Shown here piece by piece: positions 2,624-32,100 of a stretch of DNA of 42,998 nt. Origin of the DNA: Hyphochytrium catenoides (taxonomy: Eukaryota > Protista > Hyphochytriomycota). The notes beneath the pieces were generated by a model. That model ran no database searches, was not told the origin of the DNA, and worked only from the letters and a program-made list of their open reading frames with translations. Both the position numbers and the translations under genes were made by a program. The stretch is taken from positions 1 through 42,998 of the forward strand of contig FLMG01002053.1 of assembly GCA_900088475.1 (NCBI GenBank), written 5' to 3'. The first letter of the stretch is position 1. The number at the start of each line of letters is the position of its first letter.

Positions 2624-5600
2624 ATGTTGGCGGCATCCTCCTTGCGGGCCTCGTTTAGGCGGAGCTTGCTCGCGAATCATTCTCGTCCCACTGCTTGCTT
2701 GTTTGGCAGCGAGAGATGGAGCTCCACCATAGCAGAAGGAAACAACGCCAGCGAGCATGGGCGTAAGAAGAAGCCCATTATTATAACGACCCCTATCTTC
2801 TACGTCAATGCAGCCCCGCACGTTGGCCACCTCTTTTCAGCGCTGCTCGCTGACTCCTTGGTACGGGCACCATAAATGATGCGTCTATTCAATACACTGC
2901 AGCTTGGGGGGTCTTATCCTTACACTGACTTACACTTTACTAGGCGAGATGGTTCCGTATAAAAGGAGAGGATGTCATCTTCTCAACTGGGACAGACGAG
3001 CATGGCCAGAAGGTCACACTCTTGCCTTACAATCCTCTTTCTATCGCTCCCTCTTCTTGCCAGTCCTTAGCTACTCCTCTCTCCCTGTCCGGTGGCCTTC
3101 TCTTTCTTCACGCTTGAGGGGGAAGTTTTGGAGGCTCAGCCTTCATGCCTTCCCTTATATCCTTCTCTTTGCTCTTCAGCTTCTCCTAATGCCTATCTCC
3201 CAGCTTATCTGCTACATTCCTTCCAGAAGCTCCTTTGGTCTGTCCAGCTCCAACTCGTCGAATCCTGCACTTGGCATCTTGCGCTATTCTTAGCCGCTAT
3301 TCTTCTCCTTTTGAAGGTTTATGAGGCAGCTGAGAAAGCCGGAATGGACCCTGCAGAGTTCACGGACAAAGTCTCCAAGACATTCTCAACACTGTTTGAT
3401 CAGGCCAACATTAGCTACACCGACTTCATCAGGACAAGTGAGCCCAGACACAAAAAGGTAGCCACTAAGTGCAGGGAAGGTGGCTGACAAATGGCAGTGG
3501 TTGGTCCTAAGCCTCTTATTCTGCAAAGACTTCAAGAAACTTGGCCCCCGGCAGCCTCTTCACTTAGCGACCGCGCGTTTTGGCCTCTCACAATCTTCTC
3601 TAGGTCTCTCCATCCAAATAATAGCTCTTTGCTTCGTGGGACTTTGTCTTATGACTCGCTTATGCTAAAAGCTTGAGATTCCAGGATCCTCATTCTCTCA
3701 TGCTTAGGCTGTTCAACGCTTCTGGAATGAGCTGGCCAAAAGAGAAAAGATCTATTTAGGACAGGTGGGTTGCGCTAGAGTTTTATGTGTGTGGGTTATC
3801 CTCGGTTGTCTATTGCTGTGACTGTATGCAACCCCTTTTGAGTGTCTTAGAACGTGTTCCCTGATGCTTTCAGCGTCTTTTGCTGTTGCGACTAGCGGGT
3901 GCTGGCTTCTTTCTACCTCTGAACAAACTTCCGCTGATGAGTCCTTCCTCCCGGACAGTACCGTGGCTGGTATTGCAAGTCAGACGAGTCATTCCTAAGT
4001 ATGGGGAGAGTAAATGTCATTCTGGACAAGGATGGAGTACCGAAAGCGGTATGTGCACCAGGCGTCTTGATCAGCCTCTCCTTGGACACAACTTCTTCTT
4101 CATGATTGTGTCGCCTTGAGACCAATTCTCCACTGCCGATAACCACGCTGTCTTCTGCCTCGCTCGCCCTCACTGCCTGCAACTTCCCGGCCTATGGCTT
4201 CTGTAGATGTCCAAGGAATCCGGGCACGAGGCTACTGAAGTGAACGAGGAAAACTATAAATTCAAGTACGTCTTAACTCAAGGGTGATGACTGACGGGAA
4301 GACTAGCTAAAGGAAAGCTCCATTAGTACTGAGATTGAGAGAGGTGCAGAGAAGAGAGACCAGGGAAGAATTGAGCGTACGGCAAGTGTTCGGTGCTTAT
4401 AGCTGCCATAAAACGGGTCTTCGCTGTTTGGAGGAAATAAGACAGTTCAGTCATGACTAGACCTAAAGAAGGATGATCCTAATTAGATAAGCTTCAGGAA
4501 GGAAGAGGATTAAAAAGCGGCAGCACTTTGTAGGATACGGACCCTGTGTGAGGCTGGCGCCTACACTTCAAAATGCCTTTGAAAGCAGTTAGATGGTAGA
4601 ACTGCCGTTGACGACCTGCCCGTTCTTGCCTTGCCCAGCACGAAAGATATGGCTGTGACCGTCCTAGAGTGGATGACGAAGGACCCTGAAGCGGTGTACC
4701 CAGATCTACATAAGAATCAGGTATGAATCATCATTCTTTCTCAATTTGCTCCTCAGTGTTGCTTCTAGTGCTCCCCTAAGCGGGACTTGAAGGGCAAATG
4801 CCCCTATTCTTCCTTGCTACTGCCTTAGGATAGCGTTCTTCTCTTACCGTGCCCTCACGTAGGTTCGCCTCCTTCTGGCTGATCCGTCCAATCTTTCGAT
4901 CTCAAGACTCCGAAGGCCTGAGAGTTGGGGAATCTCTGTTCCAGGTACGATGTCCAGACGGAACTAACTCACACTGGCAAGAAAGAGGGAGAGAGTGAAA
5001 GGGCAATACAAGGCAAGGTTGATGGAAGGGAGAGCATTTTGGGAGTGCGGCTGGTAAAGAAGGAGTGTTCCGGCAAAGATCGCCCTAACGGCTTGCTGAG
5101 GACCAGAACGGGTCTAACTCCCCATTTGTCCATGTTAGGAGACGAGAACCATATCGTTTATGTATGGTTCGATGCTCTAATCAACTACCTCACAGCCACG
5201 GGCTACCCTTGGACCTCCTCAGAGGTAGGGAACTATAGGCGGCCCCTTGACCTATCTCCCCTAGTATCCTCTGTCTCTTTGAGACTATTGCCCTACTACG
5301 ATCCTGAGGCTTCTTTAGCGACCTTACACGAAGTTTAAGGCTTAGTCATCGCTGCTGGACCCAGAGGGGCCATATTGTCAACCTTGGAATACATTCTATC
5401 CATTGCTCTGATGTTGTGCTCCCTGTCCCTCGCTCCCACTCGGAGGTATTAACACCGCTCCTACTTGCAGGAAGGGGAAGAGATCAGCAACAAGTCTGTA
5501 CCATGGCCCCCAGACTATCAGGTATGTAAGACTGTCATTCTGCCCTTCTCTAGGCCCTATCTGAACCTTCAAATCAGATCATAGGGAAGGACATCATCAA

Positions 5601-8105
5601 GTTCCATTGCCTCTACTGGCCAGCCTTTCTAGCTGCAGCGGGTGCGTAACACTTCTAGCGGGTGCATTCGCGGTGGAGGCCAATCCGCTGCCATCTAGCT
5701 CTCCGTCTTGGGACTACATTCTTGCTAACAGTCACACAGCTAGTTTGGGCCACCCATCTTATTCTTTGGCCTTTGGATATCTTGGTCACATGTACCTGGT
5801 GCATCCTTACTCACATACCCTTGACTGCCCACGTTGTGCTTATTAGAGCTTGATTTACCTCGTCGCGTCGTTGCCCATCCTCATTGGACCGTGGGAAAGG
5901 TGAAAATGTCAAAGAGTCTTGGAAATGTTATCGACCCGCGAGATGTTATGGCAAAGGTTAGAGTCCGGAATGCGTGCTTTAAGCTTCTTTGACGGGAAAC
6001 ATCTTTAGGACTTTCCGTCGTTCTGCTGTCCACGTCTCTCCAGTGATCGCGAACGCCCCTGCAATCTTATCTTAGTTCTTTCCGTGAGCTGCATTATTTG
6101 GTGTCTTATGGGGCGTTGAAAGGGTGGCCTTAAAGGCTATTCAAGTCTCTATCAAGAATTGGACTCTTTCTCTCTTTTATTCTATCATCATGGCCCTTGA
6201 CTTCCGTTTGTTCAGCTTTAGGCTCTTTGTGTCTCTCTGCTTGGTGCTCTAGCATGACTGACGTCCCTATGTAGTATGGAGTAGAAGCAACCCGCTATTA
6301 TTTGCTGAAGGAAGCGAGGCTGCGCGATGACAAGAACTTTTGTTACGAGGAGCTGGTTAAGGTAGTGAACTCCGATCTGAAGGGCAAGTTAGGGAATCTA
6401 GGTACGATCCTCTTCTTGCTACTTTTTTATCCATATGAGCTCTTTCGCTCCGGCGACTTTTGCTCCCGTGCGCACGACAGCAACACGTGTCTCAGGCAGG
6501 GGCTTCTTCTTTGCTTAGTCCGTATGTCGTGTTGGGATCCGCTGTCTTCAAAAACTATTATCGGTCAAGTCTCGTTCGATCCTTCTCTTAGGGCTCAAAG
6601 TGATGACGTTCCTCCTTTACTAGGTCCTTCTCTTTTCCACCTGTTCACCCTTCTTACTTCTTGCCTTTTCCCGGGTCCCATCCTCACTCCGTTAAACTCT
6701 CAGTCGCTCGATGCAGTGGTGCCGCTATCCTTCCGTCCCAGACCATTCCGCAGCCAGGACCCTTGACTCCTGAAGACCAGGAGCTAGTGGATCGAATCCA
6801 CGACACCGTTCGGAGAGTCGGCGAGCTCTACGAAAAGCCAGAGATATCCTTTTCTACCACCGCAACTGCTTCTTCTCTAATTCGAACACATTCTCTCTCT
6901 CCTGTCAAGCTTCATTTCGAGGGCTGGCATCATGCTCTATATGCTCCCAGCGTGTTTTCTCCTGGCACAATCTCAACAGCGACGTTTCCTTGCGCTACCA
7001 GCATTTGTTCTTCTCTTCTTCTAGTTAGGGCTGTACTATTGTCCTCTTTCGAAACCTCCAAGGCACTGTTGCTATCTTCTCTTACCCTACACATGGAAGT
7101 CCCTTAACCAAAGACTCACCCGGGCTATGCCGTTGAGGAAGTGATGACGCTTGTGGATGCAGGGAATGCCTATTTCCATGCACAAAGTGCATGGGAACTG
7201 ACGCCTAAGAAGGACGATCCAGGTCTGCTCCCATTGGATCCAGCCTATGTGATGCCTCTTTTTTCCCCTCTCTTCTTCTGGGCGTCCGCTGCTCTTCGCT
7301 GTCTTGTTGTCTAGCGTTGGCCACAGCTATCCGGAAGAGCCTAGACTCTCCATCTGTTAGCCTGCCTGTTGCTCCTCCCCTACTCAATCGCTTGCGCCTC
7401 ACCTGTTGATCCTCCTGCCTCAGAGCCCGACGCCGCCAAGGCCGAAAGACTAGGGACGGTCTTATATAACTGTTTAGAGTTGTCAAGAATCGCAGGTACT
7501 TTTGTCATTTTCCGAGCTCTCCCTTTCTCTTTCCTCCTATTTCAGTCTCTTCCTGTTGGCTCTCTTCTCGCGTCCATAAGGCCCAAATGATAGCTTCTTG
7601 CACTCCCAGATACTGATCGATAGCTTTCTCTCTGTAGGCTGCCTCCTCTATCCTGTCGTCCCTGAGGCATCTACCAAGATTCGTAGGTATTTAGGCGCAG
7701 ACTCTGGGCCCATTACCCTTCAAAGGTATCGATTGCAGTGATAAGCCCTTCTGGTCTATCAGACTGTGGTTCCACACCTTCTCCCCTCATAGATTGCTAT
7801 CTAACTTGTTCTCTTTTCAACTTTGTCCTTTCTTAAGTCGCTTAAAGACCGTTTACCTTTGTCCAAGTCTTGGTCGCCCGCTCTAATCATCATTTGCTAC
7901 CTATAGTCTTAGGTATGGAGAAGGAAGGCCCGGGGTTTCCTTGGTCCCACAGGGAGAGGGAAGCTTCAAGCTTCAGGAGAGACTGAAGTCTCCAACAGAG
8001 ACCAAGCCCGCCGAGGGCCAACCGATGAATCGCAGGGAGAGGAAGAAGCTGGGGAAGGCTGGACGGAAGCAGGCGAATGAGGAGAGGATGCTGATGGACA
8101 AATAA
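2624..8105 (+). CDS. MARS2: Methionyl-tRNA synthetase, mitochondrial/bacterial type (about 18 exons)
   Basis: Spliced motifs [16 protein letters not shown] (HIGH motif), [50 protein letters not shown] and KMSKSLGN (~5904), plus an anticodon-binding helix bundle. The R/S/A/L-rich N-terminus resembles a mitochondrial presequence. Stop TAA at 8103-8105. Confidence 0.95.
6844..7119 (+). other. U12-type (minor spliceosome) AT-AC intron in MetRS
   Basis: 5' site ATATCCTTT at 6844, branch CCTTAAC at 7102-7108, terminal AC at 7118-7119. Excision gives in-frame YEKPE|[19 protein letters not shown]...W. Confidence 0.88.
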
Positions 8106-8428: not shown

Positions 8429-9925
8429 CTAGTCATCAAGATCAAAGATGTATGGCTGGATGAAGAATAGAAGGAGGAGCGGGGCGCCAAAGAGGAAGGC
8501 GTAGTACAGAAGAGAGAGGAACCAGGGCATCTTGGAGGGAGAGACAGGCGGAATAGGAAGGTTGTCAGGGTCCTGGTACAGCTCTTCAGAGACAGCAGCA
8601 GGATTGTCTACAATCCTAGCGGCTCTTCTACCAGCAACAAAGCCATCTTCATGAAAGCCTCGGCCCAGCCAAGCGCCAGACAGAGTGATGCCAGGCTCCT
8701 ATAAAAGCAAAGAGTAAGGAACATCAGCGTAGACCCAGGCGAAAGCACATCGAGACACAGTTGCTTAATGTATCCGCGCAGAAGAGAAACATGTCGGGCG
8801 ATAAGAGTAGACAGAAGCAAAGAAAACAAGCGGTATGGGATGCCCAAGTGCATCAGAGCGGAGATATCAGCCGCTCCTCGTTCTACCTGTATGATGTCTT
8901 TCTCTGGGATGCAGTCTGCGAGCAAGCGCGGATGGTCCCAGTAGAACTTTTTGATGATGGAGCTGGGCTCAGGGACAATGTCTGCCTTATAATCCTTAGG
9001 AATGATCGTCACGAAGATGTCGTAGCTGTGCGGCAGCTTCTGCTCGGGTTGAATTGCGGCAAAGAGATTTTATCATAAAGCCAGAAGAGGAATGTGAGTG
9101 AGAATAGTAAGAGACAGTAAAATCCAGAGGAGAGAAGAGAAGGGATGCAGGAGGAGGGAGGAGTGAGAGCATCAGAGACAAGCGTTCAGAAAGAGAGAAA
9201 GAGACCTGAAGCCTATTCATCCAGTAGGTAAGAATGTACTCGTTGTCCTTGGTAATTCGAACATTCCAGGAAGCCCACTGCTTCTTCGAGCCGGCCATGA
9301 AGCGGGCATCACGGTGAAGGTACATAGTGCTGGTATGGTTCCTGGGAGAGGCAGACAGAGCTCATAAGCAAGCTGAATGAGTAACCTTGAAAGTGGAAGT
9401 TGACTCACCTGTACTTCCTAAGTTCGTCAGCGTACTTGCTCCAGCTAATTATCTCGGCAGTAGTGTCGGGATGAGTCGCTAGGATGACGTGGTCAAAGCT
9501 GAGAGTCTCACCAGTTTCTAAAACAACCTTCTTCCCTGGGTGTGGCAACGCAGAAAGATAGAGAAAAGACAGTAAGTTGTCACGCTCCTAGACAGCTCTC
9601 TAATACTTGGCATTGTTGCTTTACTTTCCTTTCAAACCACCACGCTATCTGCATTTTTCTCTCTCTCTCTCTCTCTCAGATTTTTCTTGCCTCTTCTCTA
9701 TGTTGATATGCTCTTTTACCTCCTCTCTCTACTGTCTTGACTCGAGCATTGCATCTGATGGCGCCTCCCATCTCCTTAAAGACCTTCTGAAAAGCAGCCT
9801 TATACTTGGAGCCGATATACCACCACAGGTGTTTAGGGCCCTCCACACGCATCTTGAAGGTCCCTAGAAGCACCTATGCAGAAGTTAGCTAACCTAGTAA
9901 CACAAAGGTGGCGCGAAAGAGAGAG

Positions 9926-9979
<54 letters not shown>

Positions 9980-10548
9980 GCGAAAGAGAGAGAAAGCACA
10001 TGAAAAAGTGATTGGAAACAAAGGCTATCGCCTAAACACGTTCGAGAGAGTGAAGAAGAGTGGGGCGTACAGGGAGGAAGTGAAGTAAGACTAGAAGAGG
10101 AACTATAGAAGGATGTCACCTAAGGACTCTGGCGATGGCGGATGTAGAGCGAGAAAAGGAAGAGAGACGAAAGAAATCTATTATCTCTCTTCTCACCTGC
10201 CAGAATGGAATGTATAGACTCTGAGCGTGGGTCTTCAAGCAACGGAGGAACTGCGTTGCGGGGAGCTCCATCACATCTTTCAGAGGAATGGTCCAGAGGA
10301 TGGCGACGAATGGATAGAAGTAGATGCGGTAGAAAGTGTCCGAGTAATGTCTCTCTCTTTTCCATTCGTCAGTGGTCTGTTTCTCCTTCATCGGCATTCT
10401 CGCTATGAGATGAGTAGTGAAACGGAAGATGTCGATGATGAGTCTCCAAAGCTTCAAATTGAAGAGGTCGGAGAGCTTGACGAAGGGCGTCCGCGAGGAG
10501 AAGTTGAAGTCTCCTGGGTACTGAAGCACAGAAGCATGAGAGGGAGAA

Positions 10549-10591
<43 letters not shown>

Positions 10592-11428
10592 AAGGCTGAG
10601 TTCGACTACCCTTACACTGGGTAGAGAAACAAATAGTGAGGAACGGGTAGAGACCACATAGCGCTCGGTGGAGCCTGGCGTGATTATGAATGTTGGAAGG
10701 GATGGCACGTTTGAGAGTCAGAGAGGAGAGAAAGAAGAGAAGTGAGAAGAAAGAGGCCGCAAGAGAGAGTGAGAGGAACATGGAGAAGAAAGACAGTAGA
10801 GAAGATCTCTACACTTACATCTGAGACAACAGAGAGCGACATAGGAATCCTGCAGTTGGTGGTCCCATTCTCCTTTGTGATGCCCATGGACTTGAACCAA
10901 GCCTTTATGTTAGGGTTGGAGTCCCCGAACATCATGAAGCCAACATCCCTGAAGAGAGAAGAGAACGCCCTCAGGGTTAAAATGACGAGACAGAGAGAGA
11001 GAGAGAGAGATGGAGAGAGAGAGGTCTAGCAAACAGGTATCCACGTGGAGAGGGAGAGTGAAGCCAAAGAAACATAGACAGAAGATCTTAAAGGAAGTGG
11101 GAACTGGACGATTGAGAGAAAAAGAGAGTGAGAAACTTTGAGAGAGGACATCACCCCAAGGAAAGACACCTCAAAAAGAGAGAGAGACCTTGACATACGC
11201 AGCCATCAAGGGAATAATTGACTCCCATTCAAAGACCGCTTGCCCGGGCACTTACACTGGGTAGCCATCGACATCGATTGCGTAGGTGTGGCCTCCTATC
11301 TGCTCCTCCGCCTCCAGCAGCGTGACCTCATGCCCTTTCTTGGCCAAGTGATAGGCCGCGGACACGCCCCCGATCCCTCCGCCGACAACCGCCACACTCT
11401 TCTTTCTTTCCGGTGCTACGGTCCTCAT
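8429..11428 (-). CDS. FAD-dependent amine-oxidase-like oxidoreductase (COG2907 family) with C-terminal hydrophobic anchor, about 8 exons
   Basis: Rossmann motif VAVVGGGIGGVSAAYHL...LLEAEEQIGGH and spliced family motifs PVDVGFMMF, WASWN, LTYWMNRLQ, WDHP and GAWLGRGFHEDG. The last exon ends ...PWFLSLLYYAFLFGAPLLLLFFIQPYIFDLDD*. Confidence 0.88.
9917..9976. repeat. (GA)n microsatellite (TC on the sense strand of the host intron)
   Basis: Direct dinucleotide run; a similar run lies at ~10545-10588. Confidence 0.95.
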
Positions 11429-12534: not shown

Positions 12535-14934
12535 ATGAGTCTCAGTCAAGCTACTATTACTTGGGATGCCTGGATGGCCTGTCTCAACCATGCACTCTCC
12601 TGCGAGACGGAAGAGGTCATGGGAGTTCTTTTGGGAAGCTTTGACCATGACGACAAGCAGGTCAGAAGGCGTGGGAGAGAGATAGAGAGATGGCAGAGAG
12701 AAAGAGAGATCAAGAAGAGAGAACCAAGAGAAACGCAGGACAAGCACGAGACGCTTTGAGAGTAATCTCTTTCCTTGCTGACAAAGCACTGAGTCGACTC
12801 TTTCTGGCCCTCTTCCTCTTCTCTTCTATTCTTCTTCTCTCTTCCCTGCTGCTGTTGATGGTCTGCGTTCCAGTGTCGAGCGATCGGTGTCACAGTCCAT
12901 AACGTGGTAATCCTGAAGAGGCTGGACAAGAGGAAAGACAGGGTGGAGATCAGTTCCGAGGACCAGGCACAAGCCATAGATTTGGCGCAGATATCCTTTT
13001 CAACGCGAGGAAAGATAGAGAGCCGATTAAAACCAAAGCCATAGGACTGCAGAGAAAGAGACATCAATATAGGAAGAAAGAAACAAAGAGAGATCAGAGA
13101 GAGAACCAAATTTTAGAGGGAGAGTAATTACTAAAGAGAGAGAGGCAGAGAGAAAGAGAGAGAGGGGAGGAGAGAGAGAGAAAGAGGAAGAGGAAGAGGA
13201 AGAGAAAGCGAGATATGAGGGAGAAAGAGAGATATGAGAGAGAGAGAGAAAGAGAATGTGTGAGAGAGAGAGAAAGAGAATGTGAGGGGGAGGAAGTGTA
13301 CTAGAAAAAGAGAGAGAGAAAGAGAGAGGGAGTAAGACAGTTGTTTCGCTGTCCTTAACTCCTAGCACAGCATTGAAGATAGGACAGGGCTGCGTACAGG
13401 AGTGGTTGGCTGGTACCATTCTCACCCTCACATCACTGTCTTTCCTTCACACGTCGGTAAGGCAGACAACTCCCTCTCCTCCCACAGCTGCCATACACTC
13501 GCTTTTGCGTAGCTTGCACCGTTACGTGCTCGTCATGGCTAGCTTCTCCTTAATGTCTGTCCCTTGGTCTTGTCCTTATCTAGTGATTGACTCTAAGGCT
13601 GCTCTTCTTCAGTCTCTATCTCTTAATCTTCCCTCTCTCCTCGTCTCCGCTCCTGTCTGTTTCTATTTCTCTCTCTTCTTTCTTCGCTTTCAACGATCCT
13701 CTTTCCGGTACTAGAAGAGAAGGCACGAGATTTCTCCCATTCTTGTTTCTCTCATCTCCTCACTCTTTTTACCTAGACCTCCGCACTCAGCTTCAGTATC
13801 AGGCGATGAGCTCAGGCTTCCTAGGTCTCATCTTCTCATGCTTTTCTCAAGACGCACAGACGAAGGTAAAATGTGACCACAAAGGAGATGCCTCTAGAGC
13901 TTGGCACACCTTGCTCATCTCTTCTCTCTTGCTTCTTCTCACGCCTCCATACTTTCGTTTTCTACAAACACAATAGGGCGAGCAGATATCTGTCATTGCC
14001 TTTCAAACAGAGCTAAGCCATGGAAGTCAGAAGGCGAAAGAAGTCCCGTTAACAGTCGTCCGGAACCCCTCGTCTCTCTCTCTTCCTGTTTCTAGCTCGC
14101 CGTCGGCTTCTTCTCGCCTCAAGATGCATCGTAAGCGAAAACGGAAAGAGGAGAAAGCTGACGAGGGGCCTGCTGCATTAGTTCTAGAGCAGATGACTCG
14201 GCTTCCTGTTCTTTTGCTTGAAGAGAGTAAGAGTGACTATGAGAAATACAGCGGAAGAGAAACGACGGCCACAGAGAGAACGAGCAAGGAATTGCAGCGA
14301 ATACACTGTTCTTTGGTCTACCAGAAGGGACTTTGCCTGCTCACTGAGCAAGTGGCTGCACCCATGATGACCTCACTCAAGGACAGAGAAGTGCAAATGA
14401 GAGAAATGCAGGTAGGATGCCCCAGAAGGTCCGCCTCGCGCAGGTTTCACCTCTCTCTTGTCATGACCTTCTCTTTCGCATGTCTCTCTTATCGGCTGCA
14501 CATTTCTGTGGGATCTACGCGCTGTCATCTCCTTGCGCCGTCTTTCTTACATAACGTTTCACTCTTTCTTCCTGTCTGTTTCGTTTCATTGGGTTCTTCT
14601 CTACCTATGCTGTCTAAGGCAAGTCTTTTCCTTGCTCTCTCTCTCCCACTCTCTCTTTCTCTTTGACTTGGTCGAGCGCCCTTCCACACCGCACTTCACA
14701 AAGCTCATTCTAAAAGCCTTTGGTGACCTTGTGACACGTTCTCCAAACTCGCTGCACGCCTGCTCGTAAGGTATCCCTCCATTGACCATCACTTGCTTCT
14801 CCTCTATATCGGACCTTCAACAGATCCCGGCAGCCAAGACGGAGCTGTCTCTTCTCTATCAGCAGCTTCCAATGACACAGCAGAAAGAGTTCCGCCTCCG
14901 ATTCCCAGACCTGATCAAAGATGTCTGCAAGTAA
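12535..14934 (+). CDS. BRCC3: Lys63-specific JAMM/MPN+ deubiquitinase BRCC36 (6 exons)
   Basis: Spliced motifs CLNHALSCETEEVMGVLLG, KRLDKRKDRVEIS, VVGWYHSHPHITVFPSHVD (JAMM motif), LRTQLQYQAMSSGFLGLIFSCF and VIAFQ, followed by a helical C-terminus. Stop TAA at 14932-14934. Confidence 0.93.
12991..13368 (+). other. U12-type (minor spliceosome) AT-AC intron in BRCC36
   Basis: 5' site ATATCCTTT at 12991, branch TCCTTAAC at 13352-13359, AC at 13367-13368. Excision gives in-frame DLAQ|SIEDRTGLRTGVVGWYHSHP. There is no GT between 12991 and the next in-frame stop. Confidence 0.93.
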
Positions 14935-15573: not shown

Positions 15574-16584
15574 CTAGGGATGTGCCCTCTGTCTCTCTAT
15601 TAGACAGTTCACATGTGTATAGAACCACTCCGCCTGACTTGGAGAGAAGAACTGAAGATCAAGTGACCTCTTCCCACTAACTATAGAGATACAATGAGAT
15701 TCGGGCACCGCCTGATGTACCCGCTTGAAGACCGGCGTCTGATGGCCTTTGAAGATGTTCAGGATGTCACAAAGCTTCAGTCCAATCCAGCCTCCCTCTA
15801 CCTCCAACTCCTCTGCAAAAGGAGACATCGGCGGCTTCTGCTCTCCTGGCTTTTCCCTCACGCTATCGGGAGAGCTTGGGCTGAAACTCAGCTCTGGCGT
15901 ACCATTCTCTGTCTTTCTGGCTCTTGGACTGTTGATCACCTCTCGTAAGTGAGAAGCAACCTTCACATTGACATAAGTCGCGGCCTTACTCTCCCACTTT
16001 AGCGTAGTCCCATCCTCGTCCAGTATGACCTTTGTCGTATGTGGATACCCTTTCCTTCCATGCTTGATGACTTGAATGCCCTGCCTCATCATTGACTTGA
16101 ACCCTTCATGCATCATCTCCTTCACCCTGCCTTCCTCTTTCTGAAGACGCTCCTCTGGGGTGCGACGATATGGCGCCAACCAGCGGTGGGTGACCAGCTC
16201 TTCAGCTGTGATCCTACTGCTTGGATTTGGGTCTAACATCCGCAGAACGGCATCCTTAGCGTCTGCACTTACGTCAGCCCATTGCTCTGCCTCTGGATCC
16301 AAACACTCCATATTCCGGACATCTTTCCCATCCGTGAATTTCTCCAAGTTCTGCAGGGCTGTGGCGCTTTCAACAGAAAACGGGAACGATCCGACGAGCA
16401 TGACGTAGCAGACTACACCCAGCGAAAATATGTCACTTGCAATGCCATAGGGCAGGCCCTCAAATAACTCTGGGGCAGCATACTCTGGTGTACCACAAGA
16501 CTTGAGGAGTTTGTCTGAGCTCGATCGCAGCTGTTTAGCTAAGCCAAAGTCAGCAATCTTCACATGGTCACCATCCAAAAGAAT

Positions 16585-16617
<33 letters not shown>

Positions 16618-17850
16618 CAGGGCATGGTAGTACCGCATGGCCTCTGCTATGGATGCAATTAGCTGGGCCGCTTGCTCTTCTTGAAAGCGAGAAAGTGAGA
16701 TGAGCTTGTCGCATAGATCGCCTCCTTTCATATAATCAAATAATAAGAAGCAGATCTCTCCACAGTGGTAGAACTCATGTAAGGATATAAGCCCTGGATG
16801 ATGAAGCTAGAGAAGAGGAAAAGGGGATAGGTTAGCGTCTCTCAGCTCCCATAACTGAAGTCAACGAGTTTTTATTACCTGTTTCAAAATCTCCACCTCG
16901 TGCTTGATTGCCTCCGTGTACTTGGCACACTTGACCGCATAGACTGCTCCANNNNNNNNNNNNNNNNNNNNNNNNNNNNNNNNNNNNNNNNNNNNNNNNN
17001 NNNNNNNCAGCTCGTAGCGCTTATGAAAGAGCTCTGCTTGATGTCTCCCTTCCTTTTGCCGTCTAACAGCCTCCTCCTTGTCCGCTTTCTCCTTGGGGGA
17101 CTCGCCTTTGACCTGTCCGCCTACTTCAATGAGAGATGCATCTCTTTCTCTCCTCAGTCCCATGACCTTGTTTCGTATACTGCTTGCCCATTGATCCCTC
17201 AGCTCTAATGATTCCGCCTGGAAGTACATCGGTTGTTCGCTGGCAACCCATTCTCCCCTTTTGTCCAAGACCTCCACATAAGAGAGCGAGAAGGCACACT
17301 CCCTATCATCGATCCACTCGATGGTAGTATTGATAGTAAAGCGCAATTCTCCTCTGGGTTTCGAATGGTCTCGAGAGTTGTACCAGAGGAGTCCATCGCT
17401 TTTTAAGCGGAAGAAGCGCCTCTTCCAAGTTCTCAAAAAGCCAAAAGTGTACGTAGGCCTTGCGAGGTAACCTGCCAGCACCCTCCTCGAAAGGGTTGCT
17501 GCTGCTGTCGCCGGGAACCATCCTTTCTTGACGGTTTGAGACTCCTGTGGAAGTTCCACACTCGTCCCTTCACCATTCGAATCGTCTGCTGAAAGGCCCG
17601 GCTTGTTAGTAAGCGCTGGTGATGAGACTATGACAGCAACGGGACAACAAGCTTCATTCTCTGACAAGGTGCTAGAGGTGTCATCTGAGTCCTCACTTAA
17701 CGTTTCTTCGCTTATCCGCACATTGTAGCCACGTATAGCGCTCTCATCTGCAGAGTCTCCGTCTACATCAATCGTATTCGCACTCGAAGAAGGCGAAGTG
17801 GACTGAACTCTCGGCACCTTCGTCTCATTTACCAACAAGGTCGCTGCCAT
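15574..17850 (-). CDS. Ser/Thr protein kinase (CAMK-like) with N-terminal PH domain and C-terminal PH-like domain
   Basis: PH domain GYLARP...TWKRRFFRL...FQAES...RDQWASSI. Kinase motifs YAVK, HRDIKPEN, DFG and CGTPEYAAPE. C-terminal VIKHGRKG...LKW...SIVSGKRSLDL. One GT-AG intron at ~16808-16878; the Gly-rich loop falls in the N gap. Confidence 0.92.
16952..17007. other. Assembly gap inside the kinase N-lobe
   Basis: N run. Confidence 1.
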
Positions 17851-19502
17851 AGGCTCTGTACGCTGTTCTGAGATAATATTGCAAAACGGTTCTCCACAAT
17901 CAGGAGGTGAAGTAAGAGAAATTAGGCGAAAATAAAGCCTTTTAGAGCTCAAGAAAAGCAGAGCTCCGCGTCGGAATGACGGGAGCGAGAAAAACGAAAG
18001 TTAGGCAAGTTTCGCGTTAACTCATTTTGCAGCTTCCATCGTGCTCTTTCTCTGACGTTCCATCTCACTCTTTCTCTCTCTACATACCTTATTCGTCAGT
18101 CTTCTCCGTAACTCTTCCAGAATCTTCCTCGAGCTTGCCGTCTCTATTGTTGGGCTCGGCACAGGTTGGAAAGAAGAGGGGCGGCTCCTTTCCGTATTAC
18201 TATGCCACGTAACTTTACAAATTGGGAAAGAAACCAGGGCTGTGGAAATATTTCCTTAAAGGCCCACTAATATACGGCTTATTGGTTTTGAAGTGTACAG
18301 ATCAATGTTTCAAGTGCGTAAGACAACCTGGGACTTTGGGGTTAGTAATATGGATCTATATCAGGCGAAGTTATGGTATCAAGCGTTAATAGGCCTCACG
18401 ACGGAGCTCATGTTCAATAATAGGCCGGGATGGGAGGGCGACCATTGTGATGAAGCCCCTACGATGGGTGGGAGGTATTACGGTCGGCGTTTTTCGGAAG
18501 TTGATAAACACCGTCATTATACTAACAAGCTTCTGTTCGTAGACCGTACGCCAACCATACAGCTTAGTATTCTGCATTCTTCTGCGTTCCCTTTTTCTTC
18601 ACCAATCCACAATATCAAGAAATAAATTAGAAGCTTACTCTTCTTATTACTGATATAGAACTTGTATGAACCATCTATTTGGGATGAAGGTGATGTGTTT
18701 GCCCTCATTGTGCGGTTACAGAACCGATTTTGAAAAGTTGGCCCGCGCGGCGATGGCGACTTTCCTGACTTTTTGTCTCGTCATCGGCAACCTTTGACCT
18801 TCATCACTCCAGACTGTGCTCTCCCAGCCAGGAGGACCCCAGCTGCTTGCGTGCTCGAAGGCCAAGTGCCGGCTGATGTTCAGGTTTGCATGCTTCAGAC
18901 AAACGCTTATTGAAGACCAGCTGAGAGGAACTTGTTCCCAGATATAGAGAGGTATTAACACTCTAGAGACGACAGCTGGCAAAAATATGATCGTAAGGGG
19001 TGTAGAAGGGTGATTCCTCGTGCTGTGGGGATGATGATCAACGAGGCCCGACTGGATAGAGACCAATAACGTGTCGCTGCGGGTGTCCTGTCTGATGTTC
19101 CGCGGTCTCGTTCTAGAATTTTCACTTCTGCTAAATTTCTGGAACGAGGCTGGCTCTTAAGGCTTCGTAGTTGGGAACTTCAGCTTCTGGTGTTCAAGCT
19201 GCTAGCTCAGGACTATAAGCAGTAGCAGTACATAGTAGCATCTTGTTGTGACTCATCAACTTGTCAGCAAGGACGGTCGTCCATAAGCGAGGTATTAAAT
19301 ATGTGAATATTCTCCTGCCGCATTGCAGGGGCAATGCTGTGCTAATAGCCTCATTCGATCTTCAAGACTGAACAAACTCCTCTCCACTGACCGTAGAATA
19401 GCTCCTGGTGCTCGTCTGTGCTTGCCTCTCTCTCACTCTCTCTTTCCTTCCTGTCTGTCTGTTATATATGTGGATATACATTTCTTCATCGTGAACTACA
19501 TC

Positions 19503-26100: not shown

Positions 26101-29100
26101 TTTCTTGCTGCTCCTTAACGACAGTGGGACAGCAGCTCTCGTAAGGGATCCGTATTTTTACAGGCGCAGTGGCCCTTCACAGAGCTCCATACCGCAGAAT
26201 CTTGCAAGTGATGAAGTGACAGGAGTGGAGAACCGCGAAGACGGGGAAGCAGAGCATCGCGGAGATGAGACCGATCAGGCTGCTTCGTCTCTTCTCTACT
26301 CCGGATCCAGGGCGTCCACCTTCTTTGCAAGTGCCAGCACTCTAGCCTCCCTTACTAGCAAGAATAGAGCCGGCGGAAGGGAAAACACAAGGCGGACGGC
26401 CAAGTATGCTTCTTACTAAACAATGATACCTCTAACGCTGTCGCTTCTACAGCTGCCATTCTCTTTTCTCTCGGTTAGGGCTAGGTTTTGGACTATGCCC
26501 CTTGCCCTGCTGTTTCCGTTGACAACCGGCTCTTCCCTCCGCCGACGAGAAGTTGTGAGAGCCTGGCATTGACTTGTCGCTTCAGGTTCCTTCCTTGCGC
26601 GTTTTGCCACGTGCCTTACGCGAAGTCCTCCGCCCCTTTCGCGAACATGCGCATTGTTCCCTGTGGGTTATGTGGCAGAAAGTGGGTACCGGAGGTGCTA
26701 TTAGCAACAATCGAACCGCCAGAAGGTAGATATTGACCAATGGGCCCCATCCCCTTGCCTAATTCTTCTGCTCCAGGATCTCCTCCTGTTCCTGCTGAGT
26801 CTTGGGGCCACTTTAGTTGACACGTTCAACAACCATTGGCTCGCCCCACTTTTCGACTTTAGCTCTGCCTCTCCTCCTGTTTTGAACATGGGCCAATACG
26901 TTGGCCTCAGCCTTACCTTCTAGCATACGGTGACTGTCTTTTGGAGTTCGCCGTCTCCGTCTGTCTTCGAGAGCGAGCGTCGAAAGGGTCTTACGTCTCT
27001 TTGGCCTCAAGGCCATGCCCGTGCCCATCGCATTGTCTTACCTCTATGTGGCTCTTCCCCGGCAATTACTGTCCTAGGAATGGCGATTTCTGGGCGTGGG
27101 TGCTTAGTACAGGCCAGAGTGTGCCGTCAGAGGAGGAGAGGAGTAGGAGATGTAAATGCAACCATTGTATCAGATGCGATTCCCTTTTTGGAGTATGAAC
27201 TTCAGAGGCAGCTCATGATAAAGGTAAAGCATTCAAATGCACACTGGAGAGGGAAAGCGTGAGACTTTATGGTTCAAGGGTAAAGCTACTACAAGTCTAC
27301 TTTCTTCCCTTCCTGTTTTCCATCGTCTTTCACTTCAGATTCCATCGAGTTGCGTCTTTCAATCGCGCATTGCACTCTCTTGCGCTCTCTCTTCACATCC
27401 CGCAACAGACTGTAACGACAGAGAGGCTCCCTGAATTCTCTTGTTAAGGCTTCTTCTCCTGCTGCTTTTCACTGTTAGCCGTAAACCCAATACTAATCAG
27501 TCAGTCATTAGTTGAAGGTGTTGGGAATGAACGCCGCCTTCTGTTTGGAGACCCAAATTCAAGTCGGCTCGTCTCTTATCATTGGCGTCGCCACGGGCAC
27601 AGCGATGTATTTGCCTGCGTTACCTCCCCCTCCTGGTGCGTCTCCTGCTCTATTGCAACTACGAACTTCCTCGCCATTAGTGAAGCTCGTGACTGTCGGT
27701 TGCAGATCTGGGGAGCAACCATAGGGGCCTGCCTGCTAATTTTCCCGACCTTTCACTTTAAAGACGTCGTCTGCGATCCGTACTCTCTGTGATATCCTTT
27801 ACTCGGCCTCAATCTCTCTTTCGTTTACTCTTCATAGCTGATGCCGCCTAGTCCTTGCCCTCTCTCTCTCCTCATAGATCCTTCATCCTACCTTTGCCTA
27901 GTGGTGATGCTTCTGGCAGCCCTTCCATCCTCCCTGCCAGAGATCGGCTGCATTCACTCACTGACCTCTCGTTTATCCGTATCAACTCCTGTCCTTGAAT
28001 CGCTGAAAAGTCTTGCGCATCAGTAGGAACATAGAGATCAAGGTACATCTATAGAGAAGGCTATTGACAGATCACGTCCTAACCTCTCTGCTCTCACAAT
28101 GGCTGCATGTTTTCCGTCTAGGATGACGAAGACCGCCGTCTCGTAGAGCTCCAGCAACAAATTGAAGAGCTTTCCTCAAGCAACAAGGAAAAGGTTCAAA
28201 AGGCTAATACTGTCGCCATGGATAAGATGCTTCCAACCTTAACCAGCCGCTCACCGACTAGATTCTCTGAAGATGGTTGGGGTGGGTAAAGGCCAAGTGT
28301 TTCCCCCTTAAGATGTCACCTTTCCGGCTAAGCATTTGGAAGGGAGGGGATATGCCCTGCTCCTCTCTTTCGCTCGCTCTCGTAAACGAGCTCCTCTCTG
28401 ATAGCAGTTCTGTTATGAATATTTCTTATCTCTAAAACTCATCCGATGGCGATGACCTGGTCTAAGAGACTTACTCTTTCAAGATCGTTCATATCGTCAT
28501 CTCTTCTTTCCTATCAAAACCCTTCTTCACTTCATCTCTGACCTTAAGCTTGGTCATTGAATCAAGACCCTTGTCTCACGTGCTGTTATCGCTGCAGGTT
28601 CTCTGCAGGATGGCTCTCGAAGTCCTGGGGTCGGCGAACTGTTCTCTTTGAACCCGATGCTAGGGAACTTTGGACCATCCAACAAGCCGCTAGATAGCAT
28701 TAGGGAAGAGAGCGAGAGGATCAAGATAGAGAGAGACGCGGAGATAGCAGGCCCAGAGACATTGGAATCCGTGGGTGAACATCCAGAGGACGTCACCATT
28801 ATAGCGCCAGAAGGTAAGATTTAGAAACATTATGCGTTGGAAGAAGTACTTTCAACAGAGCGTAGAGAAAGAGAGGGAGGAGGGTATAAAAGGACCTACG
28901 CTTGTTAGAAGAGACAGATGCAGAGGGAAGCGGGTGAGCAAAGGTGAAGAGCATCTTTATCAAACAAACCTGACCGAGGGACTTTGGGAGTACGTCCGCT
29001 GAGAGTCAATTATAGGCCAAGAGGGACGGGCTGACGATGGAGGCACACAGGAGCTGACACCTGTTCCAGGTACGGAAGGGTTAGAATGAGATTGTTTTTT

Positions 29101-32100
29101 TCACAGGTGCAGAGAGAGAGTAGGAGAGAAAGACAGCGTGTCTGAGCAAGAGAGACAAGGAGAGACACAGACTCAAGCGAGAGAGAGAGAGAGGTGGACA
29201 GAGGGACAGAGAGAGGGACAGAGTGGCAGAGAGAGGGGCAAAGAAAGCACTCTAGAGCCAACGAATGAGGAGACAAAGCTCTCACCGATATTTATTATCC
29301 AGGGTGTATCCTAGACTCCGATTCAAGTGACTCTAGCTCAGATAGTGATAGGGAGCTGGACGACGATGCTGACAGGTAACGCCACCGAGATAAAAGATTA
29401 GGGACAGTGTTACGGTCGTGCCTATCAAATTGGTTGCTCGCGAGAAGGAGATGAACGCTCTGGGGCTGGAGAAAGGCAGAGAGACAGAAAGTCACCGCAA
29501 TGGCGTGGAGGGAACAACTTACAACGCAGCAGTTAGAGGGACAAGGCGTCTTTTATGGCGGTCAAACAAACGTAGCCCACCGGCGGAGTGTTGGTAGCAC
29601 GAAAACTGAGGCTGCTGACTGTCAACATATGCGAACATTATTCTGACGTTCCTGTCCCCGCCTTGACATCTGTCAAATGTAGTGTTGATCCCAAGTCTGC
29701 CTTCGTGCTAGAGGTTGACGATGAGACTGACGAGGATATCATGTCTGTGCTACTGGATGAGCAGCCACCAATGGTAAGCCGACGATCATCTCAGATCTTT
29801 TCCTTTCTAAAGCTAGCTATCGATAACCCCGTCAACTCCGCATGCGTATGAAGGGGGATATTGTTAGCATCACAACTCCAGCTGTTACTCGTTGTTCATG
29901 GTTGATCCCTAGTTGGCCCTGGCGATGGAGTCTGTGCTCAGGGCAGCCTCCTTCGGTCGTTTCCTGACGTACATCGTTGTTCTGTTGATCTAATGCTAGA
30001 CGTTACATGATCAATCGATTGACCCTGCTTGCTCCGTTAGGGCATTAGTCTATGCAACGCAGAAACTCTACCAGGTGTTTGCCGGCTAAATGCAAATATC
30101 CTTCTGGTCGTGGCTACCAGGAGGGTGAAGGTACCCCAGTTAGCACTGCACTCCACTGCCGATCGACTTAATTCGTTATTGCATTTTGCTGTCCATAGCC
30201 CCTTGGATGACGCAGACAGCGCTACTGGCCTCACGGCTAGCAGGTTGTGTTGAACCGCGACTAACTCTCTGTTTTCCATTGTAACTTCATTTCAATGGAC
30301 TGTAGGTGGATGGTAACCGAATGCGCAATACCCGTCTTAACCAGCCCTTCTCAGCGCTATTCAACCAGATGTACACAAGGTACTCTGCGCTGTGGTTGCT
30401 GTACCTCCCTCTCCATGTTCTACTACTTTCTACTACTTTCTGACAATGAGCTGTTTGCCCGTGTATCCGATAGTATCGCTTTTAAATTGCGCTTGATGGC
30501 TCCATGCATCATCTCTGGACTCAACACGAGAGTTGGCTTCACAAGCGACGACATGGTAAGACGGCCGAAAGGGCAAAGAAAGTGACTGAATGCAAAGAGC
30601 CAAAAGCCTTCTAGTACTTCTTAGACTAGTGAAGTCCCTTCAATGTGGAATGTAAACCCTTCGGAGGGCGAAAGGCAGGGGAGATAAGGGATACCTACGG
30701 AGAGCAGCAGTCCAAGAAATGGACGTCAGTTGGTGACTTACAGATCGCTATGATCTCTTCTTTCCCTGGTCCTCTGCCGATGGTTGCACACGCCCAGATT
30801 GAACTGATTCTGACGGCCATGGCGGTGGCAGAGAGTCCAGACCCCCTATTGTCAGTTCCGTCAACGGCGCAAGAAGGTGAGCGCTAGCTACAGGGCTTTG
30901 GCTGCTGAACAAGCCTGGGAGAGCCAAAGGGCTGCAAGAGAATGATGTCACGCCTTGAAGTCGGTCGATCTTACACCTGCTGTCTCTGTTCCCGTTGCAG
31001 GTGGCTTCAGAGCTCCGAGCTTGCTTCCTAGGGTAGGCCATTCTATTTCCTTACTTGCAGAGCTTTCAATCAGTTGTCCTCCGCGTTCGCTTAATAAGCC
31101 TTAATGGCTCACTGTGCCATCGGCGCTGGTACTTCATATCCTTTGGCAAGGAATACTTTTTAAGTTCCGTGGGGCCTTCCACCTCCATAAGGCACCTCGC
31201 TTGCTCTCTGTTCCTGCCGCTCTATCCTTGGCCTATGTCCATCTCGGTGTCCGTCTTCAAAGAACGTTGCTGATAGTTTTCTTAGGCTGTGGAAGAGATG
31301 ATAAGAAGCACAGTTCAGAAAGTAGCGACTACTAGACCGTCCAGCCCCATCGCCCGTCCTCTCTTCCGCAGCATGTCCAACAAAGAGATGTTGCCTTCCT
31401 CTTCTTGGCCAGAAGGGGCCTCAGACGAGGTCCGTGGGAGTGCAGCTCTCCCGATTATCTTTCTCGTCGTGCTCCAATACCTTAGTGCCTACCATTAGCT
31501 CTTCCTCTATATATAGAGCCTGATCCTTTGTCAAACGAGGAAGACGTCTCTATATGCAGCCTTCCATATTTGTCTGTTTACTTCGCGATCAGAGGTCTCG
31601 AGATAGCCATTGTTGCTCTCTTATCTCTCTCTCTTCTTGTCTTATAGGAGACTGCCTTCTTTCCGCTGCTATCATCCTGCTAAGTCTGTTTCGATGCCCA
31701 GATTCCCCCTTTGGTCTAAATTTACTTCCAATTGTAGGCCTCAGCCTTCACGCCCCATCGACCCCGGAGTTTTCGCCGCCTCAGCCTTAGCTCTGACGTG
31801 CAGAGCCAGAGTGTCCAGCTCACGCCACTGTCTTACATTCCGGGGACACAGGTCACAAGGTAGAAGGCTGGGTTGCCTCTCTTACCGCTTCACTTCACAG
31901 AGAGACATCTCTCTGCACAGGCAAACTTCTCTATACGCCCATCCTAAGCTTGTAGTTACCTTGCTGGATTCACAGCTTCACTAAAGTGCCTCTTGCTCTC
32001 TCTTCATCTTCCTGTTAATACTAATGATTACGTCTCTCTACGACCATCTCAATGGGACAGATACCTGGGAAGGGTAAACTTGCACTTCATCAAAGAAAGC

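What the first reader, a model, noticed from the sequence alone, without database searches (positions are those of the whole stretch)
6844..7119. AT-AC minor-spliceosome intron in a mitochondrial-type MetRS gene
Seen: ATATCCTTT donor, CCTTAAC branch and an AC acceptor about 12 nt downstream. Phase-0 excision restores the anticodon-domain helix (YEKPE|[19 protein letters not shown]), while read-through hits a stop at 7105-7107. Known: these are the consensus U12-type signals, and most minor introns occupy ancient conserved positions. Inference: I know of no conserved minor intron in mitochondrial MetRS, so this may be a lineage-specific U12 gain, which is considered rare. Standard GT-AG gene finders would mis-model this gene.
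Basis: partly seen in the sequence, partly recalled or inferred. Interest (0 to 1): 0.8.

Follow-up and report, generated by a model that had tools for sequence, protein, structure and literature searches.

The report
Minor-spliceosome AT-AC intron in mitochondrial MetRS
One intron of this protist's mitochondrial methionyl-tRNA synthetase gene has every sequence mark of the rare minor-spliceosome (U12) class, but it sits exactly where three water moulds (oomycetes) have an ordinary intron, so it is an old intron that differs in type and not a new gain.

Summary
Window 6844-7119 is a 276-nt, phase-0 AT-AC intron. It has an ATATCCTTTT donor, a CCTTAAC branch site at 7102-7108 and an AC end 12 nt after the branch A. 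Read-through stops at TAA 7105-7107.

It is intron 14 of a roughly 18-exon nuclear gene for mitochondrial-type MetRS. Against a profile of 119 mitochondrial MetRS, searched exon by exon, the upstream exon ends at profile position 437 and the downstream exon starts at 438. Every in-frame GT/GC-AG alternative changes the length or replaces conserved residues. This signal architecture occurs 3 times in the window against 0.01 expected.

The "lineage-specific U12 gain" reading is not supported. Phytophthora, Saprolegnia and Aphanomyces each have a short GT-AG intron at the same codon boundary and phase. Most of their other introns are also shared with this gene. The intron therefore predates this lineage, and only its type differs. 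The most likely history is an ancestral U12 intron kept here and converted to U2 in oomycetes. That polarity is inferred, not shown.

No RNA run was listed, so splicing itself is unconfirmed. The scan has already noted many AT-AC introns elsewhere in this genome. This is a sound but fairly ordinary find.

The parts
2624..8105 (+). Nuclear gene for mitochondrial-type methionyl-tRNA synthetase, about 18 small exons. The 3' end beyond 7727 was modelled by eye only.
   Evidence: Pfam PF09334 matches separate exons. The exons are collinear with a 119-sequence mitochondrial MetRS profile, positions 22-513. HVGH and KMSKS motifs lie in exons 1 and 12. Exon borders were read.
6704..6843 (+). Exon 14, which ends ...[11 protein letters not shown].
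   Evidence: Its last residue falls at profile position 437. It aligns to Phytophthora ...KVEQLFDTPD, Saprolegnia ...AYYEKPD and Aphanomyces ...RHYERPD.
6844..7119 (+). U12-type AT-AC intron: intron 14, 276 nt, phase 0.
6844..6852 (+). 5' splice site ATATCCTTT, the inferred U11/U6atac pairing site.
   Evidence: It is an exact match to the /ATATCCTT consensus.
7100..7108 (+). Branch-site motif TCCCTTAAC (core CCTTAAC at 7102-7108). The branch A is 7107 or 7106.
   Evidence: The branch A lies 12 nt from the 3' end of the intron. The stretch between them (CAAAGACTC) is not a pyrimidine tract.
7105..7107 (+). In-frame TAA that ends the read-through ORF if the intron is retained.
   Evidence: ORF 6661..7107.
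7118..7119 (+). 3' terminal AC.
7120..7222 (+). Exon 15, which begins [27 protein letters not shown]... (anticodon-binding domain helix).
   Evidence: Its first residue falls at profile position 438. All top PDB matches are MetRS, with E. coli residues 438-464 aligned to exon residues 2-28.

Best explanation
Window 6844-7119 is a genuine U12-type (minor-spliceosome) AT-AC intron. It is intron 14, phase 0, of a nuclear gene for the mitochondrial methionyl-tRNA synthetase of an intron-rich protist. This protist's MetRS is closest to that of oomycetes. The inferred mechanism is as follows. U11 (later U6atac) pairs with ATATCCTT at the 5' end. U12 pairs with CCTTAAC and bulges the branch A at 7107 or 7106. 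Cleavage occurs after the AC 12 nt downstream and joins ...YEKPE to PGYAVEEV.... If the intron is not removed, the protein ends at TAA 7105-7107 and lacks most of its anticodon-binding domain. The intron is not a new insertion. The same codon boundary holds a short U2-type GT-AG intron in three oomycetes, so the intron predates the split from oomycetes. The most likely history is an ancestral U12-type intron kept in this intron-conservative lineage and converted to U2-type in the oomycete stem. Shown here: the signals, the gap-free junction and the shared position. Inferred: use of the minor spliceosome, actual splicing, and the direction of the type change.
For: The signals are exact and correctly spaced. 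The architecture is found 3 times against 0.01 expected. In exon-by-exon profile mapping, exon 14 ends at position 437 and exon 15 starts at 438 (also seen with a first, mixed profile). The downstream exon aligns to E. coli MetRS 438-464. All 54 in-frame GT/GC-AG alternatives alter the length or replace conserved residues. The nearest GT-AG pair (6817/7113) drops VGELYEKPE, which aligns to conserved oomycete residues. The same position and phase hold an intron in Phytophthora (73 nt), Saprolegnia (48 nt) and Aphanomyces (52 nt), all GTACG...AG. All 7 Aphanomyces introns, 7 of 8 Saprolegnia introns and 3 of 4 Phytophthora introns lie at positions this gene also has (one of them, near 285, in a length-variable stretch and so approximate). 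Positions 85.0 and 181.0 are shared with animals and fungi, so this lineage keeps old introns. A second AT-AC intron in the window restores a JAMM-motif exon. Larue and Roy 2023 (PMC10639083) report few minor introns in Phytophthora and dozens in Saprolegnia, and treat type conversion as one-way, minor to major. Unchecked scan notes report a U12 snRNA gene, an RNPC3 gene and one RNA-confirmed AT-AC intron elsewhere in this genome.
Against: There is no RNA evidence: no RNA run was listed for this stretch. No minor snRNA gene lies in this window, and the rest of the genome could not be read. The profile scores of the two flanking exons are modest (about 11 bits each, i-E about 7e-5 among 17 exons). 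For polarity, no sampled organism has a U12-type intron at this position. The position is absent from the 7 intron-bearing animal, fungal and amoebozoan orthologues sampled, which have 427.1 nearby instead. An ancestral U12 state is therefore inferred only from the general rule. Phase 0 is the less common phase for old minor introns (about 22%).
Confidence: 0.72

Rival explanations
1. The intron was ancestrally U2-type, as it is today in oomycetes. It became U12-type only in this lineage, by conversion or by replacement of the intron's ends, perhaps as part of a lineage-wide spread of AT-AC introns. This is the nearest surviving form of the reader's idea.
For: All three oomycetes sampled are U2-type at this site, and no U12-type case was found in 13 orthologues. 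The window is unusually rich in ATATCCTT (7 copies, 3 with full architecture) and has no GTATCCTT. Both well-supported AT-AC introns in the window are phase 0. Larue and Roy suggest phase 0 enrichment might reflect recent gain in Blastocystis. Massive minor-intron gain is documented in Physarum.
Against: It would need about 15 specific bases (ATATCCTT plus CCTTAAC at the right distance, and both terminal dinucleotides) to arise in an existing intron. The reverse change needs only loose U2 signals, and donors in this gene are as loose as GTCACA and GTCTGC. The field treats conversion as one-way. The AT-AC introns of the window share no sequence beyond the signals, so there is no sign of a spreading element. 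Oomycetes are known to have few minor introns left.
Confidence: 0.17
2. The intron arose by independent (parallel) insertion at the same codon boundary in this lineage and in oomycetes.
For: Parallel gain at preferred sites is known in principle. The intron sequences themselves are unalignable (276 nt against 48-73 nt).
Against: Six other intron positions are shared between this gene and the oomycete genes, including all seven of Aphanomyces when 437.0 is counted. Shared descent of the whole exon-intron structure is far more economical.
Confidence: 0.04
3. The stretch is not removed as a U12 intron. Either it is spliced at nearby GT/GC-AG sites by the major spliceosome, or the AT-AC pair is used by the major spliceosome, or the intron is retained and the gene is decaying.
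For: No RNA data were available. An in-frame GT(6817)-AG(7113) pair exists, and U2 donors in this gene are loose.
Against: That pair deletes nine conserved-helix residues, adds two, and uses an AAAG acceptor with no pyrimidine tract. Every other in-frame pair is worse. The U12 donor and branch motifs are exact, which chance does not give. All 17 checked exons are intact and collinear with the profile.
Confidence: 0.05

Closest known systems
Canonical U12-type AT-AC introns (Hall and Padgett 1994; Tarn and Steitz 1996, as cited in PMC10639083)
   Same: It has the /ATATCCTT donor, the CCTTAAC branch site, a 12-nt branch-to-3' distance, an AC end and no pyrimidine tract.
   Different: It lies in a gene (mitochondrial MetRS) for which I found no reported or sampled minor intron. 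It is phase 0, the rarer phase for old minor introns.
Minor introns of oomycetes (few in Phytophthora, dozens in Saprolegnia) and of Blastocystis ST1 (253 found, 77% AT-AC, 49% phase 0), from Larue and Roy 2023, PMC10639083
   Same: The MetRS is closest to oomycete MetRS, which suggests a stramenopile setting. The AT-AC subtype and phase 0 match the Blastocystis pattern.
   Different: This intron is 276 nt, against about 40 nt in Blastocystis. In the three oomycetes sampled, the homologous intron is U2-type.
Minor-to-major (U12-to-U2) intron type conversion at conserved positions
   Same: The same codon boundary and phase hold a U12-type intron in one lineage and a U2-type intron in the sister group.
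   Different: The direction is not shown here, because no third lineage with an intron at this site was sampled.

Membership tests
U12-type (minor-spliceosome) intron, AT-AC subtype | 5' splice site matching /RTATCCTT | tested here: met
   ATATCCTTTT at 6844-6853.
U12-type (minor-spliceosome) intron, AT-AC subtype | Branch-site motif TCCTTRAY | tested here: met
   TCCCTTAAC at 7100-7108, with the core CCTTAAC exact.
U12-type (minor-spliceosome) intron, AT-AC subtype | Branch A about 10-15 nt from the 3' splice site, with no pyrimidine tract between | tested here: met
   A 7107 lies 12 nt from C 7119. The intervening sequence is CAAAGACTC.
U12-type (minor-spliceosome) intron, AT-AC subtype | Removal gives an intact, collinear protein | tested here: met
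   Exon 14 ends at profile position 437 and exon 15 starts at 438, phase 0. Oomycete orthologues have an intron at the same boundary.
U12-type (minor-spliceosome) intron, AT-AC subtype | The junction is seen in RNA | not testable with these tools
   No RNA run was listed for 5800-7800, so read laying could not be used.
U12-type (minor-spliceosome) intron, AT-AC subtype | The organism encodes U11, U12, U4atac and U6atac snRNAs and specific proteins | not testable with these tools
   There is no Rfam hit in this window, and only the window is readable. Unchecked scan notes report a U12 snRNA gene and RNPC3 elsewhere in the genome.
Mitochondrial-type methionyl-tRNA synthetase | Class I MetRS catalytic core with HIGH and KMSKS motifs | tested here: met
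   PF09334 matches exons 3, 9 and 12 above the curated cut-off. PHVGH is in exon 1 and KMSKS in exon 12.
Mitochondrial-type methionyl-tRNA synthetase | Closest relatives are the mitochondrial enzymes of eukaryotes, not the cytosolic form | tested here: met
   The best full-length matches are named mitochondrial MetRS of animals and fungi, plus oomycete and dictyostelid orthologues. Identity is about 53% over the exon-wise local BLAST alignments to oomycetes.
Mitochondrial-type methionyl-tRNA synthetase | N-terminal targeting sequence and mitochondrial location | tested here: inconclusive
   About 45 residues rich in Arg and Ser, with a single Glu as the only acidic residue, precede the conserved core. 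No targeting predictor or experiment was available.

The most novel reading that the evidence does not exclude
The intron was an ordinary U2-type intron in the common ancestor with oomycetes and was turned into a U12-type AT-AC intron in this lineage. That would be one visible case of a wider, recent expansion of phase-0 AT-AC minor introns of the kind suspected in Blastocystis. It would be a rare documented major-to-minor switch at a known ancestral position.
Probability: 0.15. Interest if true: 0.7.

Novelty: new member of a known kind. Interest (0 to 1): 0.3.

Why it matters
The gene model for an essential mitochondrial translation enzyme is only correct if this AT-AC intron is recognised, and GT-AG-only pipelines would truncate or distort the anticodon-binding domain. 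The pairing of a U12-type intron here with U2-type introns at the same codon boundary in three oomycetes is a clean, datable example of intron-type switching within one eukaryotic group. Two confirmed and two possible AT-AC introns lie in 43 kb, with no GTATCCTT at all. This suggests the genome may be a useful system for asking whether AT-AC-rich, phase-0 minor-intron sets are old or newly gained. As a single intron it is an expected kind of feature.

Tried and rejected
- RNA evidence: the look-up of sequencing runs listed no run, so read laying was not usable.
- Rfam on the whole window gave no snRNA or other RNA family.
The scan with the stop-free ORF 7108-7311 found no relatives.
- PDB phmmer with exon 14 alone gave only chance hits. 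Exon 15 gave weak but uniformly MetRS hits.
- The big representative search with exon 3 found no close relative, at best 64% identity over 45-47 aligned residues. The lineage seems unsampled in those libraries.
- Pfam on exons 14-16 alone found nothing useful, so a purpose-built mitochondrial MetRS profile was used instead.
- Introner or transposon origin is rejected for now: the AT-AC introns share no sequence beyond the signals and CT-rich low complexity.
- ATATCCTT alone is not diagnostic. The copy at 3157 lies inside a GT-AG intron, and the minus-strand copy at 16788 is coding sequence of a kinase.
- Literature searches for a minor intron in mitochondrial MetRS or in At3g55400 found nothing.
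All searches used single exons by reference. One joined 60-residue translation was printed inside a script for display only.
- The third word search was left unused, because no gene-structure look-ups remained to exploit it.

Full report
**The observation**

The window reads ...GAAAAGCCAGAG|ATATCCTTTTCTACC... at 6844 and ...GGAAGTCCCTTAACCAAAGACTCAC|CCGGGCTATGCC... at 7119/7120. The distance from branch A 7107 to the last intron base is 12 nt. The stretch between them (CAAAGACTC) is not a pyrimidine tract.

The intron is 276 nt and phase 0. The upstream frame ends ...[12 protein letters not shown] and the downstream frame begins [34 protein letters not shown]. Read-through in the exon frame stops at TAA 7105-7107, the end of ORF 6661..7107.

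**Is it more than chance?**

ATATCCTT occurs 7 times on the two strands against about 1.1 in simulated sequence, and GTATCCTT does not occur. The full architecture is ATATCCTT, then CCTTAAC within 1 kb, then 7-13 nt, then AC. It occurs 3 times, at 6844, 12991 and 27792, all on the + strand. The expectation is 0.01 per window in 300 first-order Markov simulations. The motif alone is not enough to call an intron. The copy at 3157 lies inside a GT-AG intron of the same gene, and the minus-strand copy at 16788 is coding sequence of a kinase.

**The gene**

From I read a + strand gene from ATG 2624 to TAA 8103-8105, with about 18 small exons:

| Exon | Coordinates | Exon | Coordinates |
|---|---|---|---|
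| E1 | 2624-2860 | E10 | 5471-5521 |
| E2 | 2944-3012 | E11 | 5578-5641 |
| E3 | 3317-3457 | E12 | 5847-5956 |
| E4 | 3708-3764 | E13 | 6275-6401 |
| E5 | 3959-4048 | E14 | 6704-6843 |
| E6 | 4207-4265 | E15 | 7120-7222 |
| E7 | 4600-4720 | E16 | 7424-7495 |
| E8 | 4863-4944 | E17 | from 7638 |
| E9 | 5139-5224 | | |

The 3' end beyond about 7727 is unverified. All other introns are GT-AG, with loose donors such as GTACGG, GTCACA, GTAGCC and GTCTGC.

Pfam PF09334 (class I MetRS) matches single exons above its cut-off. PHVGH and KMSKS are present. The best full-length relatives are mitochondrial MetRS of eukaryotes, named as such in Lingula, fishes and many fungi. In exon-wise BLAST, oomycete orthologues rank first, at about 53% identity over the local alignments. 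About 45 N-terminal residues rich in Arg and Ser, with a single Glu as the only acidic residue, precede the core. "Mitochondrial-type MetRS" is therefore supported by homology. Targeting itself was not tested. No closer relative of the organism was found in any library, and a metagenome scan was empty.

**Are the AT-AC borders the right ones?**

Every search and profile mapping was done exon by exon.

- With a profile built from 119 mitochondrial MetRS, the 17 exons map collinearly to positions 22-513.
- Exon 14 aligns up to its 45th residue at position 436, so its last residue falls on 437.
- Exon 15 aligns from its 4th residue at position 441, so its first residue falls on 438. The junction is gap-free.
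- A first, mixed profile gave the same contiguity, at its positions 416/417.
- Exon 15 alone finds only MetRS among solved structures, with E. coli residues 438-464 aligned to exon residues 2-28.
- I enumerated all in-frame GT/GC-AG pairs around the stretch (54 pairs). The closest GT-AG pair (6817/7113) removes VGELYEKPE and adds TH. The only length-neutral pair (GC 6862/AG 7137) swaps PGYAVE for intron-encoded ISFSTT. All use acceptors with no pyrimidine tract.

**Comparison with orthologues**

I solved 13 orthologue gene structures by exact spliced mapping of the annotated protein onto its genomic locus. The species were Lingula, Capitella, Danio, Entrophospora, Rhizophagus, Phycomyces, Polysphondylium, Balamuthia, an intronless metagenomic gene, the intronless P0081, Phytophthora fragariae, Saprolegnia parasitica and Aphanomyces invadans. 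None of their introns has a U12-type donor. All are GT-AG or GC-AG.

Three of them have an intron at exactly profile position 437, phase 0:

| Organism | Exon junction | Intron |
|---|---|---|
| Phytophthora fragariae | ...QLFDTPD / FARGLEEIVFFLHDVNRYF | 73 nt, GTACGT...AATAG |
| Saprolegnia parasitica | ...AYYEKPD / FSMAIRSVMFFLYDINRNF | 48 nt |
| Aphanomyces invadans | ...RHYERPD / FALVTKSVMSLLYEVNRNF | 52 nt |
| This window | ...ELYEKPE / [19 protein letters not shown] | 276 nt, AT-AC |

The conserved N, F and W after the junction fall at the same offsets. The rest of the structure agrees as well. All 7 Aphanomyces introns (228.0, 257.1, about 285.0, 345.0, 388.1, 437.0, 490.1), 7 of 8 Saprolegnia introns and 3 of 4 Phytophthora introns lie at positions this gene also has. 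The one near 285 sits in a length-variable stretch, so that match is approximate. Positions 85.0 and 181.0 are shared with animals and fungi. Animals, fungi and Balamuthia have an intron at 427.1 but none at 437.0.

**What this means**

The shared position is independent support that an intron lies exactly at this codon boundary, which backs the AT-AC borders. It also shows the intron is older than this lineage, so "lineage-specific U12 gain" is not supported as an intron gain. What differs between lineages is the intron type.

The usual reading, which the most recent pan-eukaryotic survey takes as an assumption, is that conversion runs from minor to major (PMC10639083). Oomycetes are known to retain only a few (Phytophthora) to dozens (Saprolegnia) of minor introns. 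This gene also keeps many old introns that oomycetes have lost. I therefore take the ancestral state to be U12-type, kept here and converted in the oomycete stem.

This polarity is an inference. No sampled lineage has a U12-type intron at the site, and no outgroup sampled has any intron there. The rival, a major-to-minor change in this lineage, cannot be excluded. Several things speak for it:

- Both well-supported AT-AC introns of the window are phase 0.
- The window has no GTATCCTT.
- The same AT-AC, phase-0 pattern in Blastocystis has been discussed as possibly recent.

Against it stand the roughly 15 specific bases that would have to arise in an existing intron, and the lack of any shared sequence among the AT-AC introns that would suggest a spreading element.

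**What is missing**

No RNA run was listed for this stretch, so splicing is not shown. No minor snRNA lies in this window, and the rest of the genome could not be read. Earlier notes of this scan report a U12 snRNA gene, an RNPC3 gene and one RNA-confirmed AT-AC intron elsewhere in this genome. The scan also holds 29 notes on AT-AC introns in this genome. I could not check these notes and use them only as context. They do mean the scan has found this kind of feature before on other DNA of the same genome. No paper linking a minor intron to mitochondrial MetRS was found.

**Verdict**

This is a well-supported U12-type AT-AC intron in a gene not known to carry one. It lies at an old intron position that is U2-type in oomycetes. 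It is a new member of a known kind. It has modest interest as a single intron, and somewhat more as a datable example of intron-type switching and as a pointer to an AT-AC-rich genome.

Noticed in passing
window 12991-13368 (+): A second AT-AC intron with full U12 signals: ATATCCTTTTCA at the 5' end and TCCTTAAC followed by 9 nt ending in AC. It is phase 0. Removing it joins ...AIDLAQ to SIEDRTGLRTGVVGWYHSHPHITVF, a JAMM/BRCC36-like motif. Its body is purine-rich (pyrimidines 21%).
   Followed up: partly
window 27792-28254 (+): A third stretch has the perfect architecture: ATATCCTTTACT at the 5' end and ACCTTAAC followed by 11 nt ending in AC. I could not place it in a reading frame, because the flanks have stops in all frames within 150 nt. 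It may lie between very short exons or in a UTR.
   Followed up: partly
window 30096-30354 (+): ATATCCTTCTGG is followed 239 nt later by GTCTTAAC and then an AG 13 nt downstream. This may be an AT-AG minor-like intron or chance. The coding context is unresolved.
   Followed up: no
whole window: ATATCCTT occurs 7 times and GTATCCTT never. If this holds genome-wide, the minor introns here are dominated by the AT-AC subtype, as reported for Blastocystis ST1 and unlike animals and plants.
   Followed up: partly
window 2624-8105 against L004, L011 and L012: The exon-intron structure of this MetRS gene contains the oomycete structures almost entirely: all 7 Aphanomyces introns, 7 of 8 Saprolegnia introns and 3 of 4 Phytophthora introns. 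It also shares two positions with animals and fungi. This lineage looks intron-conservative, and oomycetes look like progressive intron losers. The oomycete intron at profile 454, phase 2, is absent here and in Aphanomyces.
   Followed up: yes
window 15574-17952 (-): A CAMK-like protein kinase gene with long exons and a PH-like N-terminal part. One ORF is interrupted by a run of N (an assembly gap, shown as X in the translation). An ATATCCTT inside it at 16788 is coding sequence, not a splice site.
   Followed up: no
window 9880-10000, 10440-10600 and elsewhere: Long (GA)n/(CT)n microsatellites and strongly CT-rich introns give many spurious ORFs of LSLSLS or RERERE type.
   Followed up: no
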